A DNA stretch of 64,000 nucleotides. Origin: Selaginella moellendorffii (lineage: Eukaryota; Plantae; Lycopodiophyta). Shown here in pieces: positions 19,180 through 25,712 of this stretch; position 1 is the first letter of the stretch, and each line of letters opens with the position of its first letter. The DNA lies in contig NW_003314279.1 of assembly GCF_000143415.4 (NCBI RefSeq), positions 682,130 to 746,129 of the forward strand. Direction: 5' to 3'. A model generated the notes under the pieces. The model was given only the letters and a program-made list of their open reading frames with translations. It ran no database searches and was not told where the DNA came from. Both the position numbers and the translations under genes were made by a program.

Positions 19180-21376
19180 TTACTCGAAATCTTGGGGTTG
19201 GCTGCTTGCAAAGACGTTCCACACGGTGGCTCCTGTCACGTAGAAGAAGATTGAAGGGAGAAACAACGAGAGCTGAGGAGGAAAAGAAAAACTTTGAGCC
19301 TCCTTGAGCATCTGGGAAATGCTTGAAAGGCTTCGCTTACCGTCCAGGAATCGGTTTGATCGAAAATATAACCGGTTGCCGCAACTCCTACCACTCCAGG
19401 AATTGCACCAGCAGTATTTGTTATGCCCTGTGAGAAATGCTTTGGTTTAGAAAGGAAAAAAGCAAGGAGATGATTTGGTTCCATACCAAAAGAATGCCGG
19501 CGTACTTCCGTGATATATCTTGGTGTGTACAGTAAAGCCCTGGCAACACTGTTAGCAGTCGCAGAAACAAGGAAAATGACTACCAGATACCTGACAGCGC
19601 GAAACTTGACAATCCAATACCACTGGTTAGAAGCAGTATGACCGACCACGGTGGTAGACTAGGAACCAATGAGACAATACTCATGGAAGCCGATGGAGAG
19701 AGAAAAGCGATGCTTTGGCAGATTTTTCTCACCTAGAAACATAACAGTGCTAGTCAGAGGGAAAGAAAGAGAACGCCAGACTTACCACTGTGGTGCTTAG
19801 TCCAGACGTGATCATGCTATCGGCCCAGACAGCCGCAAAGCTTGTTACTGGAACAGATGCTAGAGGAGGAAGAATTGATATCTGTACTTTCATTAACCAG
19901 ACTTCCATTTTGATAGTAAAAGAAAAAGCTCTTACCAGCGCTGCATTAGTCAGATTCAGGTGTAGCTCATCACTGATATAAAAAGTCAGTACACAATGGT
20001 TTTTCTACAGTTTAACGCACCTTACAAATGTTGGCATCCAGGAAAGAAGTGTAAAATATCCCCAATTTCCACAGAAATGGGCATAAATCATCGCCCAGAC
20101 TGGTGGACTTTTGAAAAAAGCGCTCCAAGGGACCTGTGACAAAACAGAAAAGATGATTACGGCGTCGAACGAAATGTTCCTAACCTTTGACGGTTGTCCA
20201 GTCTCATTGTCAGCAGATGCTTGATCTGTCTCTGCAAAAAATGGTGTTTACATCACTCAGAACGCTGTATACTTGTGTTTACCTGAATCGCATCCTTCCG
20301 GATTGAACAGAAGGCACCTGGTCAAACACACGTCAATAGAAGTTCAAAGGCTTGTTCCATACCAGAAAAGGCCAAGCAAACCAAAGACGTAGAAAACAGA
20401 TTGCCATCCAAAGTTTTCAATGAAAACAGGAGCGAAAAGCAGCCTGGTTTGCAAGATTCCATAAGTTACGCATTAGAGAGGCACACAAGCTCACCCCGCT
20501 ATACTTCCAACGCTGAGGCCACCGAAAATAACAGAGACCGCTCGGGAACGCTCGTTCGCACTAACTGTTCTACATTCACACATGAAAAACAAACAGTTAC
20601 TGATAATGTTACGTAATTGTACCTTGCTACGAGATCGGTAGCGGCTGAAGGAGACACGCCTTCGCCGACACCGACCTGTCAATTCCGGAATCCATCACTC
20701 TTTTTCAGAGAAAGAAAAACTATACTAGAAAGAAAAACATACCATCACCCGGCTTGCCAGAATTAATGGTAGATATCGGGCTGAAAGTGGGACAGCCATA
20801 GTTGCCAACGACCAAAGAAAGACACCACCACGCAACACATATCTAGTACCAAACGAAAGCAGGGAAAATAAAAAAGAAACGGAGAAGATAGAGCCTTACT
20901 TTCCAGAAAATTTACGTGAAAGCCATCCACCAGGCAACTGGCTGAAAGCGTATCCCAGAAACAGCGACGACTGAACTAGTCCAGAAGTTGTTGCCGGCCA
21001 TCCAAACTGCTGCGACATCGGTATGATAGCTACACTCAAGTTCACCTTGAAACAAACAAGTAAATATCGTTAAGTCAGCGATAAAATTAATCAGCGAGAA
21101 ACTGAGAGATACCTTGTCCATGTTGCAAATCACGAACGCGAGAGAAGCCATGAGAATGACCCTGTACTTGGGTTGATTCCAAGAAACACTAGCAGTATCT
21201 GTGGACGAAGGTATTGCAGTAATTTCATCTTCTTTATCCTGTGAGACACAGTGGAACCTCGGCCCTGAGCCGTTCCGGAGTCTGAGATGCTTTGTACTTA
21301 AAGGGCTAGAACGCGGACAGATACTGATCTTGGTCGCGACTCGAGGTAGCCCAAGACACAAAGCCACTGCTGCCAT
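19180..21376 (-). CDS. PHT4/ANTR (SLC17-type) anion/phosphate transporter, plastid-type, multi-exon
   Basis: 'AFVICNMDK|VNLSVAIIPM..FGW...GLVQSS..GYAFSQLPGG', 'VWAMIYAHFCGNWGYF.LLSWMP' and 'GITNTAGAIPGVVGVA.TG'. Confidence 0.9.
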
Positions 21377-21444
21377 TGACGGACCTTTATCTACAAACCA
21401 TAGCTGACCTTCTAAACTCTTTGGTTATACAGACTGGGGGCGTT

Positions 21445-22423
21445 TTACTGTTGCTTTACAGTCAGTGAGGGCTGGCCCCGAGGCAGCCTCTTTGCAATCT
21501 CCTGTATGTTTCTGAGAATTAAAAGGGATTCAACAAAAAACCTCAGCGTACCTCGAAGACCTCGTTAATGTTGCCGGCGGTTTTTGCCGACGCCTCCGTA
21601 AAGAACATGGAGTTGCTCTCTGCGTAAGCCCGAGCTTCCTGTAGATAGCATGTTGTGAGAGCAATTTTGAAGTGCCAACTTGAACATACATCTGTTGAAA
21701 CCGTGCGCAAGTTGTCAAGGTCGGCCTTGTTCCCAACAAGCGCAAGAACTATCCCTGCATTCGCATGTTTTTGTAGCTCCTACACGAAAATAAACGAGCA
21801 ACCATAGTTAATGACAAGCACGCAAAATGAAAACCAAAGGTGGAACCTTGACCCAGTATTGAGCTTTCTGAAATGACTCCTTGCTGGTCAGGTCGTAGAC
21901 TACCACCGCTGCAGAAGCTCCCCTATAGTACAGTGGTGCTAATGAAGCATATCTCTCTTGTCCTGCGGTGTCCCATATCTCAAACTTAACTGTGCTCGAG
22001 TCTTGGAGAGCTATAGTTTGCGACAAAAAAGAAGCACCAACAGTAACCTGTAGCACCATATCAAAATAATAAACACATTAAAAGCACTACTTACCTTTGA
22101 TGACGGATCAAACTGCCCCCTTACAAAGCGCAGAACAATGCAGCTCTTTCCCACTCCGGAGTCGCCGAGAAGAACCAGCTGATTGTAGAGAGTTGGATCA
22201 ATTCACAGCACACGCTTTGCAACTCACCTTGACCCGTAGGTGTTTAGTATCTTGCGATCCATTTTCCAGAGAACCGTCACTCAAATGTGGCAAACCTTTA
22301 ACTGGAGAAAAAGGAAATCAGCTTCGAACTTGGAGCTCACACAAATAGATCGCATAAATTGACGATTTGGGTACAGCCATCGAAGGAGCAAAACATACCG
22401 GGTCTAGAAGCCGCACACCCCAT
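21445..22423 (-). CDS. RABF1: Plant-unique Rab5 GTPase ARA6/RABF1
   Basis: N-terminal MGC (myristoyl/palmitoyl sites), GDSGVGKS, 'VTVGASF', [13 protein letters not shown] and SAK, with no C-terminal prenylation Cys. Confidence 0.95.
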
Positions 22424-22455
22424 CGTCGTAAGAACCTATGGAATATGCTGATCTC

Positions 22456-23679
22456 TCACTGGAGTTTAAGTAGTTCCGGAATAGTCACGACCGAATAGCC
22501 CTTTCGTTTAAGCTCGGGGAGAAGTACCCTTAGCACCTGAAACCAAATTTGTGATCGAAACTAGGAAAAAGGGTAGTACCTCCGGAGTCTGTATCTTCTG
22601 CTGTTCCCTGTCGTGAAGAACGATAATAGCACCGGGATGAACCTACAACTTTCCACAATAAAGGTTTAAGGACCATCTGGAAAATTGACACATACCCTCC
22701 ACAATAGGTACTTTGCAATCAACTTTCCTTTGTTCCTGAACAACGTGTCGAGAGGATACAGAGAGCCGAGTACCAATTTGTAGCCGTACCCCTCGACAAG
22801 ATCTATCATTTCTCGATTGTAGAAGCCGTGCCCCTGCACGAGAATTATGATTGATCAGTGAACGAAGAAGCTTGAGTTACATACGGGTCGAAACCACTTC
22901 CACGGTTTCCCGTCCTCGCCTTTACGGAAAAATGGTTCGAGCCGTCTCTCTGTGGCCAGAAGCTGGGCAGTAAACTCCTCCTGCATGAATACAAATGCTT
23001 CAACTTACGCCTATAAAAACGAGGCATACCGGAGAGAGACGCCAGGAAGCACAATCGTACATGGTGTGGTTCCCAACCTCATGCCCTGTATCATCCAACG
23101 TGACGAAAAGCAAAGCTATGGCGACGCACCTTCTTTGTAAATTCTCTCGACCACCTCTGGGCACTTGTCCATATTACTTCCTATCAGGAACCACGTCGCT
23201 TTGCTGTGGTTTTCCTCAAGAATGTCCAGTAGCTGAAACACGAAAATCCCTCGGGACGATTTAGCTAAGAACATGTAAAGCATTCACAAAGAAAAATAAA
23301 AAGAATCTCTCCAGGCACTCAAGAAAAACTAGTTCACTACCTCGTGTGTAATGTCTCTGTGAGGCCCATCGTCCAGAGTGAGCGCGACCAGAAGCTCTGG
23401 ACAAAATCAAGCGATGTAAGAGTGCTAGGGAAGGAAAGAGAAGAGCAGACCGTGCTTTTCTCGTCTTTGATCGAGAAACAAGACTCTTCGCTGCCTCGTT
23501 TGCACGATCCTGACGAGCCATGTCGGGTGAACGGCGAGCCTGGATTCACAAGAAAGGATGAGCAACGCAAAGAGCTGCCTATGATCGATCACTCACGTAA
23601 GAATGCCAATGCCGGCGATTCCAAGCGCTCCAAATCCGAGGGTAAGCGTCGCGGCGGCCACTCCGCCTTGTGGCCACAT
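22456..23679 (-). CDS. Carbohydrate esterase family 4 (NodB-like polysaccharide deacetylase) with N-terminal TM, 9 exons, ~250 aa
   Basis: Manual splicing at canonical GT-AG sites gives an open frame with VALTLDDGP, KATWFLIG, GHEVGNHTMYD, WFRPGHG, LGSLYPLD, PGAIIVLHD and 'LPELKRKGYSVVTIPELL'. Confidence 0.88.
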
Positions 23680-23759
23680 TCTCTTTTCTTCCAAGAAATT
23701 AGGGTTCTACGAGGAAATGCATTCCGCTGACAATTCTAGGGCTCCTCGAGCGCCGATGG

Positions 23760-25712
23760 ATGCGGCGAGCGAATGTAAGAATCTGTGCCTCTCGCCTGCT
23801 CTCTTGTGATCTTTCTCTCTGCAGAGCGAGCACACAATCAATCTGGCAGAGCAGCAAGATCGAGGAGAATGTTTTGGTATCCAGGAGTTTCGATGGCACT
23901 GGGTTCGCCCTCGCGGCCTCGAGAGCTTGCGGCATTCTCAGGGATCTGGAAACAGCACGAAGGCTACACAAGGATGCAATCGCGATCGACGGGAACAGCA
24001 ACATCTACATCGCGAGCAGCTTGGTGGACAGCTACGCGAAATGTGGGAGCCTGGTCGATGCTCGCAGCGCCTTCGAAGCTATGGAGTCCCGCAATGCAGT
24101 GGCGTGGACGTCGCTGATCCTCGGCTGCGCGGAGAATGGGGAGGCCGAGGCTGGCCTGGAGTTGTTCCAGCGGATCATCGACGAGGGCTGCGAGCCAAGC
24201 GCTCGATCTTTCGTGGCGGCTCTCAAGTGTTGCTCTCGGCTGGCCAGGGAAGAAGAGGGAAGCCTCGATCGTCTCCATGGCAAGACGCGCAAGAAGCTGA
24301 GAAGCTTGGCTCGAGGGGCGGCTATTCATCGCTTGATCGAGGGATGCGTGGATATCTTCGTCGCGGGCAGCCTGATCGACATGTACGCTAGCTGTGGAGA
24401 TTTGCTGCGAGCTCGTCGCGTCTTCGACAGGATTCCATGCCACAACTTGGTAGCGTGGAACGCTATGATCCTGGGCTATGCCGAGCAAGGTGACGGACGC
24501 TCGTCACTGGAGCTCTACGATCGCTTGTCCTCAATTCCGGGGACGGTTCCAGACGCTCGAACGATTGGAGCTGCTCTTAAGGCTTGCTCCCTCCTAGCAG
24601 CTGACAAGCTCCGCAACGAAAAGTTCTATGAAAAGTTGGAGGATGGAAAGTTGGAGCATGAAGGACACGAAGAAAGGATAGAGCATGAAGAACAAGAACA
24701 CAGTAACACTCTCCAGGTCAGGGAATTGCTGGACAAAGGCAGGGAGCTGTTCTCTCGAGCAGTGGAACTCGGGTATGGCTCGGACGTCTTTCTTCTCAAC
24801 ACGGTGGTAGACTTTTACGCGAAGTGTGGGAGCTTGGCCGAGGCTCGGGCGGTCTTCGACAGGATTCCATGCAAGACGTGCATCTCCTGGAACGCTCTCA
24901 TGCTCGGCTACGTGGAGAACGGTCATGCCGAGCAGGCTCTAGACTTGTTCTTGAGCATGCCGGACGAGAAGGATTCGACGACGTTTGCTGCGGCTTTCAA
25001 GGCCTGTGGTAGCAGAGCTTTTCTGGGAACTGGGAAGTCCATCCACGCACAGATCTGCCGGTGTGGAGCTGAGAAGAACCTGGTTGTGGCGACCGGAGCT
25101 TTGGATTTCTACTCCAAGTGCGGCAACATGGTCGAAGCTCAGCACATCTTCGACTCCATGCCGTCGAAGAACACCGTAACTTGGACAGCGCTCATCGGCG
25201 GATTCAGTCGCCTGGGAGGAGAGGAATCGACAAAGCAGGTGTTTTATCTCTTCCGGGAGATGCTTGACGGAGGGTTCAAGCCAGACGGTGCCACTTTCGT
25301 GCTGGTCATTGCCGCTTGCAGCCATGCCGGCCTGGTCGACGAAGGCCGGAAGATCTTCGAAGTTCTTCCGGGGCACGGCGTCTCTCTCGGGATAGAGCAC
25401 TACCACGCCTTGATCGATCTTCTGGGACGAGCCAACGAGCTCCAGGAAGCTCTGGACGTGGCGGAGACGATGCCTTTCAAGCCCAGCTTCGTGACATGGA
25501 TGACGCTGATGGCCTGCTGCAAGAAGTGGGGCAATGCAGCGATTGGGAAGCTCGCGTTCCAGAGATTGATAGCGATCGATGCGACAGACTCCACTGCCTA
25601 TGTGCTCCTGGAGAAGATCTACGCGAGCCAAGGATCGTGGAAGGAGCTCGCGGAGATCGAAGAAATGAGGAAGAAGAAGAAAGCGAAGACCGTTGACTCT
25701 GTACGTCTTTGA
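23760..25712 (+). CDS. PLS-class pentatricopeptide repeat protein with E extension, no DYW (start uncertain)
   Basis: Repeated 'SLVD.YAKCG.L.DAR..F..M...N.V.W', 'ACSHAGLVDEG', 'HY..LIDLLGRA..L.EA' and E-domain 'YVLL..IY...G.W'. Confidence 0.92.
   Translation: MRRANVRICASRLLSCDLSLCRASTQSIWQSSKIEENVLVSRSFDGTGFALAASRACGILRDLETARRLHKDAIAIDGNSNIYIASSLVDSYAKCGSLVDARSAFEAMESRNAVAWTSLILGCAENGEAEAGLELFQRIIDEGCEPSARSFVAALKCCSRLAREEEGSLDRLHGKTRKKLRSLARGAAIHRLIEGCVDIFVAGSLIDMYASCGDLLRARRVFDRIPCHNLVAWNAMILGYAEQGDGRSSLELYDRLSSIPGTVPDARTIGAALKACSLLAADKLRNEKFYEKLEDGKLEHEGHEERIEHEEQEHSNTLQVRELLDKGRELFSRAVELGYGSDVFLLNTVVDFYAKCGSLAEARAVFDRIPCKTCISWNALMLGYVENGHAEQALDLFLSMPDEKDSTTFAAAFKACGSRAFLGTGKSIHAQICRCGAEKNLVVATGALDFYSKCGNMVEAQHIFDSMPSKNTVTWTALIGGFSRLGGEESTKQVFYLFREMLDGGFKPDGATFVLVIAACSHAGLVDEGRKIFEVLPGHGVSLGIEHYHALIDLLGRANELQEALDVAETMPFKPSFVTWMTLMACCKKWGNAAIGKLAFQRLIAIDATDSTAYVLLEKIYASQGSWKELAEIEEMRKKKKAKTVDSVRL

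What the first reader, a model, noticed from the sequence alone, without database searches (positions are those of the whole stretch)
22456..23679. Hidden microbial-type CE4/NodB polysaccharide deacetylase in a land plant
Seen: nine short exons absent from the ORF track splice into an intact ~250-aa protein with an N-terminal TM and CE4 motifs TLDDGP, GHEVGNHTMYD, WFRPGHG and IIVLHD. Known: CE4 chitin/peptidoglycan deacetylases are typical of bacteria and fungi and, to my knowledge, not of angiosperms. The H-x3-D and RPG.G variants recall a poorly characterised cyanobacterial/fungal subgroup. Inference: an old, intron-rich acquisition or a retained ancestral gene that could de-N-acetylate chitin/LCO/peptidoglycan signals, or plastid peptidoglycan.
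Basis: partly seen in the sequence, partly recalled or inferred. Interest (0 to 1): 0.82.

Follow-up and report, generated by a model that had tools for sequence, protein, structure and literature searches.

The report
Ancient plant CE4 deacetylase gene
This is a real, expressed and already annotated Selaginella gene for a membrane-anchored CE4 (NodB-type) deacetylase. It has been inherited vertically from green algae through gymnosperms, appears to be missing from flowering plants, and has no known function.

Summary
On the minus strand, 23679..22456, nine exons with eight GT-AG introns (43-108 nt) splice into an intact 254-aa protein. It is letter-identical to RefSeq XP_002972071.2 (Selaginella moellendorffii LOC9640714 isoform X1), so the gene is annotated, not hidden. 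Spliced contigs from runs of four studies support the model.

The protein matches Pfam Polysacc_deac_1 at 97.8 bits and folds confidently (pLDDT 94) as an N-terminal transmembrane helix plus a NodB barrel. The nearest solved structure is Bacillus cereus Bc1960, a peptidoglycan GlcNAc deacetylase.

It belongs to a distinct membrane-anchored CE4 subfamily. The second metal-binding His is Asp (NHxxxD) and motif 3 reads RPGxG.

It is not a recent microbial acquisition. Orthologs occur in prasinophytes, Chlorokybus, Klebsormidium, Zygnematophyceae, liverworts, mosses, lycophytes, ferns and gymnosperms, and the tree follows the species tree. All eight intron positions and phases are shared with Marchantia and Klebsormidium.

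No angiosperm ortholog was found, and a published survey finds no CE4 in Populus. This distribution matches that of the complete plastid peptidoglycan gene set, which gives a testable but unproven link.

The substrate is unknown. I rate it a new member of a known kind, of moderate interest.

The parts
22456..23679 (-). Whole coding region of the CE4 gene (S. moellendorffii LOC9640714): 9 exons, 8 GT-AG introns, 254 aa
   Evidence: Splice model. It is identical to XP_002972071.2 / P0132. Spliced RNA-derived contigs support it.
23597..23679 (-). Exon 1: start codon and N-terminal transmembrane helix (residues 4-27 at 23599-23670). An in-frame stop lies 10 codons upstream of the ATG, so there is no presequence.
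   Evidence: The AF2 model has a helix at residues 4-30.
23451..23539 (-). Exon 2: end of the transmembrane helix, the conserved (Q/H)PxW amphipathic helix and a basic flank
   Evidence: Helix 34-43.
23341..23396 (-). Exon 3: CE4 motif 1, TLDDGP (23362-23379). D66 is the catalytic base and D67 a metal ligand.
   Evidence: D66 and D67 are invariant in 68 sequences.
23130..23232 (-). Exon 4: first beta-alpha units of the NodB barrel
   Evidence: PF01522 scores 30.5 bits on this exon alone. Contig pieces end at 23129/23232-23234.
23030..23085 (-). Exon 5: motif 2, HEVGNHTMYD (23054-23083). H117 is a metal ligand, and D121 stands where classical CE4 enzymes have the second metal-binding His.
   Evidence: Alignment to Bc1960 pairs HTYSH with HTMYD. 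Motif table.
22885..22980 (-). Exon 6: ends in WFRP of motif 3 (22885-22896). R160 and P161 are invariant.
22696..22833 (-). Exon 7: GHG of motif 3 (22825-22833) and motif 4, YPLDTLF (22738-22758), with invariant D190. This is the subfamily-specific region used as the search query.
22580..22642 (-). Exon 8: motif 5, IIVLHD (22610-22627), with H217 as the catalytic acid. An alternative acceptor 6 nt upstream gives the truncated isoform X2 (208 aa, ending L-stop).
   Evidence: Joint 22640/22694 (cut +2) in all four runs.
22456..22536 (-). Exon 9: C-terminal strand and helix, and the TGA stop at 22456-22458
   Evidence: Joint 22534/22578 (cut +2) in all four runs.

Best explanation
This is a nuclear, expressed and vertically inherited plant gene. 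It encodes a single-pass, N-terminally membrane-anchored enzyme of carbohydrate esterase family 4 (NodB fold).

Inferred mechanism: it is a metal-dependent hydrolase. Asp66 (motif 1) acts as the general base that activates water. Asp67, His117 and Asp121 hold the metal; this is an Asp-His-Asp triad rather than the classical Asp-His-His. Arg160 positions the base. His217, tuned by Asp190, protonates the leaving group. The reaction removes an acetyl group from a sugar.

The protein belongs to a distinct subfamily found in bacteria, green plants and a few other eukaryotes. Its signature is TIDDxP / NHxxxD / WFRPGxG / YPxD / ILHD, preceded by a transmembrane helix and a QPxW helix.

The gene was already present, with its present nine-exon structure, before Klebsormidiophyceae and land plants split. 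It appears to have been lost in angiosperms.

The substrate has not been shown. My single most likely candidate, at about 35%, is GlcNAc or MurNAc of the plastid-envelope peptidoglycan. This rests on two things: the nearest characterised relatives are peptidoglycan deacetylases, and the gene's distribution matches that of the complete Mur/PBP gene set.

The confidence given below is for the enzyme class and the evolutionary history, not for the substrate.
For: - Gene model and expression.
- CE4 membership: Pfam 97.8 bits. PDB sequence hits reach E 1e-23 to peptidoglycan GlcNAc deacetylases and acetylxylan esterases. The AF2 model has pLDDT 94.2, and the best Foldseek hit is Bc1960 (4l1g), TM by target 0.86.
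- Catalytic residues: T64, D66, D67, H117, R160, P161, D190 and H217 are invariant across 68 plant, algal and bacterial members.
- Subfamily signature: it sets the group apart from classical CE4 enzymes.
- Vertical history: land plants form a clade at SH-aLRT 97, joined in turn by Zygnematophyceae (88), Klebsormidium (90) and Chlorokybus plus Pyramimonas (95). Green monophyly is not rejected, and the constrained tree is better by 18.6 lnL (p-AU 0.84).
- Introns: eight introns sit at the same alignment columns with phases 2,1,0,1,0,0,0,0 in Selaginella, Marchantia paleacea and Klebsormidium.
- Angiosperm absence: and PMC6852159.
- Shared profile: the complete Mur gene set is reported in prasinophytes, Klebsormidium, Marchantia, Physcomitrium, Selaginella and conifers including Cryptomeria, and in no angiosperm (PMC12681378).
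- Targeting hint: the N-terminal extensions in mosses, liverworts, Zygnematophyceae, Diphasiastrum and Cryptomeria are rich in Ser/Thr and Lys/Arg and poor in Asp/Glu, as transit peptides are.
Against: - No enzyme assay, localisation or mutant exists for any member of this clade in the papers I could search.
- The His-to-Asp change at a metal ligand has no solved precedent among the PDB hits I inspected, so metal use and activity are inferred.
- The Selaginella, fern, Klebsormidium, Chlorokybus and prasinophyte proteins have no presequence. Their Gly/Ala-rich anchor with a basic C-terminal flank leaves both topology and compartment open.
- The subfamily also occurs in the non-photosynthetic amoeba Acrasis, and its nearest Atlas structure cluster is from Ascomycota. 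It is therefore not tied to plastids everywhere.
- No named Micromonas or glaucophyte hit appeared among the listed hits, but each list was cut at 120 rows.
- Many unrelated genes share the 'lost in angiosperms' pattern.
- Bacterial gene neighbourhoods give no consistent clue.
Confidence: 0.82

Rival explanations
1. It is a secretory-pathway or apoplastic type II membrane enzyme. It would act on wall or signal glycans: O-deacetylating xylan or mannan as CE4 acetylxylan esterases do, or de-N-acetylating chitin or LCO oligomers.
For: - The Selaginella, fern and Klebsormidium proteins start directly with a signal-anchor-like helix and have no presequence.
- CE4 acetylxylan esterases (7y51/7fbw, 2c71) are among the best PDB matches, at E 1.7e-23 and up to 33% identity.
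- The nearest Atlas structure cluster is an Ascomycota 'chitin deacetylase' group with the same length and anchor.
Against: - Angiosperms keep acetylated xylan, chitin perception and mycorrhizal LCO signalling, yet lack this gene. Those roles therefore do not explain the distribution.
- The anchor's charge distribution, neutral at the N-terminal side and +4 at the C-terminal flank, does not favour a lumenal catalytic domain under the positive-inside rule.
- Nothing here discriminates between substrates.
Confidence: 0.3
2. It is a catalytically inactive CE4 pseudoenzyme or glycan-binding protein, like Bacillus anthracis BA3943. The cause would be replacement of the second metal-binding His by Asp.
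For: BA3943 pseudoenzyme structures (6hm9, 6hpa, 7bkf) rank 4th to 6th in the fold search. Motifs 2, 3 and 4 all depart from the classical CE4 consensus.
Against: The catalytic base, the first two metal ligands, Arg, the motif-4 Asp and the catalytic-acid His are invariant across 68 members from bacteria to gymnosperms. Asp is a competent metal ligand, and it is itself conserved in nearly all members. A pattern held this long and this widely points to a working active site.
Confidence: 0.07
3. It is a recent horizontal acquisition from a bacterium or fungus, or contaminant DNA in the assembly.
For: CE4 is mainly a bacterial and fungal family. Bacterial homologs (Chloroflexota, cyanobacteria, Gemmatimonadota) share the anchor and the motifs at 35-41% identity.
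Against: - The gene has eight spliceosomal introns, and it sits 32 bp upstream of a plant Rab GTPase gene and 80 bp from a PPR gene.
- Intron positions and phases are shared with Marchantia and Klebsormidium.
- The plant tree follows the species tree.
- The ultimate bacterial donor is unresolved. A clade of green plants plus cyanobacteria is neither supported nor rejected (p-AU 0.34).
Confidence: 0.01

Closest known systems
Bacillus cereus Bc1960 / Bc1974 peptidoglycan N-acetylglucosamine deacetylases (PDB 4l1g, 5o6y, 5n1j)
   Same: Same NodB barrel: Foldseek E 1.5e-18, TM by target 0.86, 28% identity. Sequence E about 3e-23. Shared features are the motif-1 Asp-Asp, the first metal His, the Arg of motif 3 and the LxH catalytic His.
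   Different: Classical HTxxH (two metal His) against HTMYD here. RPPYG, with a hydroxylated Pro in the crystal, against RPGHG. DxxDW against YPLDTLF. This protein also has the transmembrane plus QPxW N-terminal module and is a eukaryotic, intron-bearing gene.
Bacillus subtilis PdaB / PdaA / PdaC (MurNAc deacetylases; TIGR02764, TIGR02884; PDB 1w17, 6h8l)
   Same: PdaB is the best NCBIfam hit, at 124.9 bits over residues 57-251. The fold matches with TM by target 0.74-0.84.
   Different: The score is far below the equivalog cutoff (237.4), so it is not a PdaB or PdaA ortholog. The motif-2 and motif-3 variants differ as well.
Rhizobial NodB chitooligosaccharide deacetylase (TIGR04243)
   Same: Same domain family. 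Alignment covers residues 61-248 at 85.5 bits.
   Different: The score is below the cutoff of 240. NodB has TFDDGP / NHTMxH / RAPYG / DPRDW and no membrane anchor. In the tree it falls outside the subfamily.
CE4 acetylxylan esterases (Caldanaerobacter 7y51/7fbw, Clostridium thermocellum CtCE4 2c71, Streptomyces SlCE4 2cc0)
   Same: Best PDB sequence match is 7y51, E 1.7e-23. Fold TM by target is up to 0.90, with 33% identity.
   Different: These are soluble or modular secreted bacterial enzymes with HxxxH. They act on O-acetyl esters of xylan. No test here shows that this protein is an O-deacetylase.
Bacterial membrane-anchored 'chitin deacetylase family proteins' of Chloroflexota, cyanobacteria, Gemmatimonadota and Acidobacteriota (uncharacterised)
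   Same: Same length, same N-terminal transmembrane plus QPxW module, and the same five-motif signature including NHxxxD and RPGxG. Identity is 35-43%.
   Different: They are prokaryotic and intronless. None is functionally characterised as far as I could find, and their gene neighbourhoods are inconsistent.
BA3943, a CE4 pseudoenzyme of Bacillus anthracis (PDB 7bkf, 6hm9)
   Same: High structural rank in the fold search. It is a CE4 with a non-canonical active site.
   Different: Here every catalytic position other than the second metal ligand is canonical and invariant.

Membership tests
CE4 / Pfam PF01522 Polysacc_deac_1 (NodB homology domain) | Profile match above the curated gathering score | tested here: met
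   97.8 bits against a cutoff of 23.1, E 5.9e-28, residues 56-181.
CE4 / Pfam PF01522 Polysacc_deac_1 (NodB homology domain) | Distorted (beta/alpha) barrel NodB fold | tested here: met
   AF2 model with pLDDT 94.2 and pTM 0.88. The top 35 Foldseek PDB hits are all CE4 structures, the best with TM by target 0.86-0.90.
CE4 / Pfam PF01522 Polysacc_deac_1 (NodB homology domain) | Motif 1, TFDD: catalytic-base Asp followed by a metal-binding Asp | tested here: met
   TLDDGP at residues 64-69. D66 and D67 are invariant in 68 members.
CE4 / Pfam PF01522 Polysacc_deac_1 (NodB homology domain) | Motif 2, H(S/T)xxH: two metal-binding His | tested here: not met
   The motif reads HTMYD. The first His is invariant, and the second position is Asp in nearly all subfamily members. 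This is a variant triad, Asp-His-Asp. The protein is still a family member by profile and fold.
CE4 / Pfam PF01522 Polysacc_deac_1 (NodB homology domain) | Motif 3, RPPxG, and motif 5, LxH (catalytic-acid His) | tested here: met
   R160 and P161 are invariant, and the second Pro is replaced by Gly (RPGHG). IIVLHD has invariant H217.
CE4 / Pfam PF01522 Polysacc_deac_1 (NodB homology domain) | Metal-dependent deacetylase activity | not testable with these tools
   Needs recombinant protein and assays.
NodB chitooligosaccharide deacetylase (TIGR04243 equivalog) | Score at or above the equivalog cutoff of 240 bits | tested here: not met
   85.5 bits. In the tree it lies outside the NodB clade.
Peptidoglycan GlcNAc deacetylase PgdA (NF045820 / NF045821 equivalogs) | Score at or above the equivalog cutoffs of 800 and 400 bits | tested here: not met
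   80.9 and 96.5 bits. A PgdA-like function stays possible, but orthology is not shown.
Sporulation MurNAc deacetylases PdaB / PdaA (TIGR02764 / TIGR02884) | Score at or above the equivalog cutoffs of 237.4 and 298 bits | tested here: not met
   124.9 and 94.6 bits.
Green-lineage membrane-anchored CE4 subfamily (defined here) | N-terminal transmembrane helix plus (Q/H)PxW helix; TIDDxP, NHxxxD, WFRPGxG, YPxD and ILHD; nine-exon structure with intron phases 2,1,0,1,0,0,0,0 | tested here: met

The most novel reading that the evidence does not exclude
This CE4 clade is a so far unrecognised peptidoglycan-modifying enzyme of the plastid envelope 'wall' in green algae, bryophytes, lycophytes, ferns and gymnosperms. 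It would be a de-N-acetylase of GlcNAc or MurNAc. In this reading it was inherited together with the Mur/PBP pathway and discarded with it in angiosperms. It would be anchored in the inner envelope with the catalytic domain in the intermembrane space, mirroring the extracytoplasmic orientation of its bacterial relatives.
Probability: 0.28. Interest if true: 0.75.

Novelty: new member of a known kind. Interest (0 to 1): 0.42.

Why it matters
CE4 enzymes are treated as bacterial and fungal tools for peptidoglycan, chitin, Nod factor and xylan. CAZyme surveys of flowering plants find none (PMC6852159).

This work shows that the green lineage has carried its own membrane-anchored CE4, with an unusual Asp-His-Asp metal site, since before the split from Klebsormidium. 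It kept the gene through gymnosperms and lost it on the way to angiosperms.

That adds a clean example to the set of ancestral plant genes missing from the model angiosperms. The distribution copies that of the complete plastid peptidoglycan pathway, and Physcomitrium and Marchantia both have the gene. This gives the plastid peptidoglycan field a concrete, knock-out-ready candidate for wall modification.

If the link fails, the gene is simply one more uncharacterised esterase.

Tried and rejected
- **Short-exon scans.** Pfam on single exons gave a hit only for exon 4; the others were too short. A PDB search with exon 7 alone gave only chance hits.
- **No typed protein.** The full spliced protein has no window reference, so I did not type it into any tool. 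I searched with exon 7 by reference and recovered the identical database protein P0132. I used P0132 for everything afterwards.
- **Spurious hit.** P0002 (2593 aa, nine stretches) from the exon-7 search is a repetitive protein without a CE4 domain.
- **Closterium fusion.** The PPPDE-CE4 'fusion' in P0031 is a truncated PPPDE fragment at residues 2-72. It is probably a merged gene model, so I did not use it as topology evidence.
- **Bacterial neighbourhoods.** Anaerolineae carry a conserved 840-aa alpha/beta-hydrolase plus AMP-binding fusion next door. Cyanobacteria have thioredoxin-like and GNAT genes, and other phyla have unrelated genes. There is no consistent functional clue.
- **Origin test.** A clade of green plants plus cyanobacteria is not rejected but not supported either (p-AU 0.34), so the donor stays open.
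- **Literature.** Searches for a characterised plant CE4 of this clade found nothing relevant. One search was a poorly chosen query.
- **Further intron comparisons.** Genomic loci for Adiantum (file too large) and Cryptomeria (product not on record) could not be fetched.
- **Recent HGT or contamination.** Rejected on introns, plant neighbours and the tree.
Full report
**1. Observation**

Reading the minus strand of 22380-23780, I built a splice model by script. It has nine exons:
- E1 23679-23597
- E2 23539-23451
- E3 23396-23341
- E4 23232-23130
- E5 23085-23030
- E6 22980-22885
- E7 22833-22696
- E8 22642-22580
- E9 22536-22456

The eight introns are 57, 54, 108, 44, 49, 51, 53 and 43 nt long, and all are GT..AG. 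The CDS is 765 nt and encodes 254 aa with no internal stop. An in-frame TAG lies ten codons upstream of the ATG, so there is no hidden N-terminal extension in this exon.

**2. The gene is real, expressed and already annotated**

The spliced protein has no window reference, so I did not type it. I searched with exon 7 by reference against 1.84 billion representatives. The best hit, P0001, is S. moellendorffii 'uncharacterized protein LOC9640714 isoform X2'. Its cluster also holds P0132 (XP_002972071.2, isoform X1, 254 aa) and the older 192-aa model EFJ26988 / UniProt D8RLU6, 'NodB homology domain-containing protein'. P0132 is letter-identical to my model. The window is therefore Selaginella moellendorffii, and the gene is 'hidden' only from a six-frame ORF track.

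Isoform X2 comes from an alternative acceptor 6 nt upstream of exon 8. It adds TTG TAG, which reads as Leu then stop.

Contigs from four runs of four different studies (X1, X5, X7, X10) were laid on 19800-24200. The evidence from them:
- CT..AC joints, which are GT..AG on the minus strand, at 22534/22578 and 22640/22694. With the stated +2 shift these match introns 8 and 7 exactly.
- A joint at 22830/22884, which is intron 6.
- Loose ends or piece boundaries at 23232-23234, 23341, 23397, 23451 and 23596. These are the predicted edges of exons 4, 3, 2 and 1.

The tool only guesses that these runs are RNA. Contigs with introns removed cannot come from genomic DNA, so a spliced transcript exists.

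**3. What the protein is**

- Pfam PF01522 scores 97.8 bits, E 5.9e-28. Exon 4 alone reaches 30.5 bits.
- No NCBIfam equivalog cutoff is reached. PdaB scores 124.9 against 237.4, NodB 85.5 against 240, and the PgdA models 81-97 against 400-800.
- PDB sequence hits reach E about 1e-23. They include Caldanaerobacter acetylxylan esterase 7y51/7fbw, B. cereus Bc1960 (4l1g/5o6y), CtCE4 and SpPgdA.
- With a 68-sequence alignment (A2), AlphaFold2 gives pLDDT 94.2 and pTM 0.88. The model has helix 4-30 (the anchor), helix 34-43, and then the barrel.
- Foldseek against the PDB returns CE4 structures for all of the top 35 hits. The best is Bc1960, with TM by target 0.86.

**4. A distinct subfamily**

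I tabulated the motifs over 81 sequences.
- Every membrane-anchored relative carries TIDDxP, NHxxxD, WFRPGxG, YPxD (without the DxxDW Trp) and ILHD. This group includes plants, algae, Acrasis, Chloroflexota, cyanobacteria, Gemmatimonadota and Acidobacteriota.
- Classical CE4 enzymes in the same alignment carry TFDDGP, NHTxxH, RPPxG, DxxDW and LLHD. These are Bacillus, Akkermansia and rhizobial NodB.

T64, D66, D67, H117, R160, P161, D190 and H217 are invariant in 68 members. The active site is therefore complete except that the second metal-binding His is an Asp. I infer an Asp-His-Asp metal site and an active enzyme. This is not shown.

**5. Distribution and history**

Profile and single-sequence searches of 5.8 billion proteins found named orthologs in these groups:
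- Chlorophytes: Pyramimonas, Tetraselmis
- Streptophyte algae: Chlorokybus, Klebsormidium, Mesotaenium, Spirogloea, Closterium
- Liverworts: Marchantia polymorpha, M. paleacea, Riccia
- Mosses: Sphagnum, Ceratodon, Physcomitrium patens (LOC112284919)
- Lycophytes: Diphasiastrum, Selaginella
- Ferns: Adiantum, Ceratopteris
- Gymnosperms: Cryptomeria, Taxus, Ginkgo

Using the Cryptomeria protein as query, every hit above the bacterial score level is a non-angiosperm streptophyte. The exceptions are unnamed sequences, and in the tree those fall with ferns, mosses or Zygnematophyceae. No angiosperm appeared. The poplar CAZyme survey states that CE4 appears not to be present in Populus, and that the CAZy-listed entry is a rust contaminant (PMC6852159). 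One caveat: each hit list shows only the best 120 rows, and no plant genome DNA could be searched directly.

The 81-row tree (quick IQ-TREE, LG+C20) nests as follows:
- land plants, SH-aLRT 97
- plus Zygnematophyceae, 88
- plus Klebsormidium, 90
- plus Chlorokybus and Pyramimonas, 95

This is the species-tree order. Holding all 35 green sequences together gives a better likelihood than the free search (p-AU 0.84). The bacterial sister group is unresolved. A clade of green plants plus cyanobacteria costs 9.1 lnL and is not rejected (p-AU 0.34). Endosymbiotic origin is therefore possible but not shown.

I fetched genomic loci for Klebsormidium (L081) and Marchantia paleacea (L082). Both genes have nine exons. 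The eight introns fall at the same alignment columns as in Selaginella. Six match exactly, and two are within 1-3 columns in a gappy stretch. All three species share phases 2,1,0,1,0,0,0,0. The exon-intron structure therefore predates the Klebsormidiophyceae-land plant split. Recent transfer and contamination are excluded.

**6. How it probably works**

- Shown: the domain family, the fold, the conserved catalytic residues, the N-terminal helix, expression, and vertical descent.
- Inferred from the established CE4 mechanism: metal-assisted general acid/base hydrolysis of an acetyl group, with D66 as base, H217 as acid, and D67/H117/D121 as ligands.
- Not shown: the substrate, the compartment and the orientation.

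Two observations bear on the substrate.

First, the distribution matches that reported for the complete plastid peptidoglycan (Mur/PBP) gene set. That set is found in several prasinophytes, Klebsormidium, Marchantia, Physcomitrium, Selaginella, Thuja, Picea and Cryptomeria, and in no angiosperm (PMC12681378). The closest characterised enzymes are also peptidoglycan deacetylases.

Second, N-terminal extensions of 40-260 residues occur in mosses, liverworts, Zygnematophyceae, Diphasiastrum and Cryptomeria. They are rich in Ser/Thr and Lys/Arg and poor in Asp/Glu, as transit peptides are.

Several points weigh against the link:
- Selaginella, ferns, Klebsormidium, Chlorokybus and the prasinophytes have no extension.
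- The subfamily also occurs in Acrasis, and it has an Ascomycota structural twin.
- Many genes share this loss pattern.
- Bacterial neighbourhoods are uninformative.

I put plastid peptidoglycan at roughly one in three, a secretory or wall glycan role at about the same, and a pseudoenzyme at well under one in ten.

**7. Comparison with what is known, and novelty**

The protein is a member of CE4 by profile and fold, but it fails the canonical HxxxH feature. It is not an ortholog of NodB, PgdA, PdaA or PdaB, because it scores below every equivalog cutoff and lies outside those clades.

I found no paper on this plant clade. The gene itself is in RefSeq and UniProt with an automatic NodB-domain label.

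My verdict is a new, uncharacterised member of a known enzyme family. What is added here:
- the subfamily signature
- proof of ancient vertical inheritance
- the gymnosperm-yes, angiosperm-no pattern
- the parallel with the plastid peptidoglycan pathway

Interest is moderate.

Noticed in passing
window 22399-22534 (CE4 stop at 22456-22458; next ATG at 22423-22421): Only 32 nt separate the CE4 stop codon from the ATG of the next same-strand gene. That gene is a Ras-family GTPase starting MGCAASRP (Pfam Ras on its exon) and looks like the ARA6/RABF1 type. Single contigs in X1 and X5 (2410 and 2285 nt) run, spliced, from CE4 exons 7-9 through this gene into the following gene around 20741-21500. 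In X7 and X10 a contig links CE4 exons 7-9 with the Rab gene. The transcripts either overlap or the genes are co-transcribed, and contigs cannot tell which.
   Followed up: partly
window 23679-23774: The CE4 ATG (23679, minus strand) and the ATG of an intronless 650-aa PPR/E-motif gene (23760, plus strand) lie head to head, 80 nt apart. A CE4 contig runs unspliced to at least 23774. The CE4 5' UTR therefore overlaps the start of the PPR coding region on the opposite strand.
   Followed up: partly
window 22643-22648: A tandem acceptor (AAAG|TTGTAG|G) at the end of intron 7 explains RefSeq isoform X2. Use of the upstream AG adds Leu-stop and removes the last 47 residues, including the catalytic-acid His motif. 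The four runs laid show the downstream (productive) acceptor among the joints listed.
   Followed up: yes
window 21251-21446, 22479, 22936-22938: Several single-base differences are carried by whole contigs in some runs but not others. This is consistent with the two haplotypes or strains known for this species rather than with RNA editing. No DNA run of the same individual was compared.
   Followed up: no
L003, L006, L008, L010, L012, L015, L030 (Anaerolineae-type loci, L012 labelled Desulfobacteraceae): In these loci the anchored CE4 gene sits next to a conserved ORF of 834-862 aa. The five scanned (L003, L006, L008, L010, L012) are fusions of an alpha/beta hydrolase with an AMP-binding (acyl-activating) enzyme. 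This may hint at a lipid-linked substrate in that lineage. It is not seen in cyanobacteria or other phyla.
   Followed up: partly
P0031 / P0039 (Closterium): Two Closterium gene models join a truncated PPPDE (Peptidase_C97) fragment to the N-terminus of the CE4 protein. This is probably a merged gene model rather than a true fusion.
   Followed up: partly
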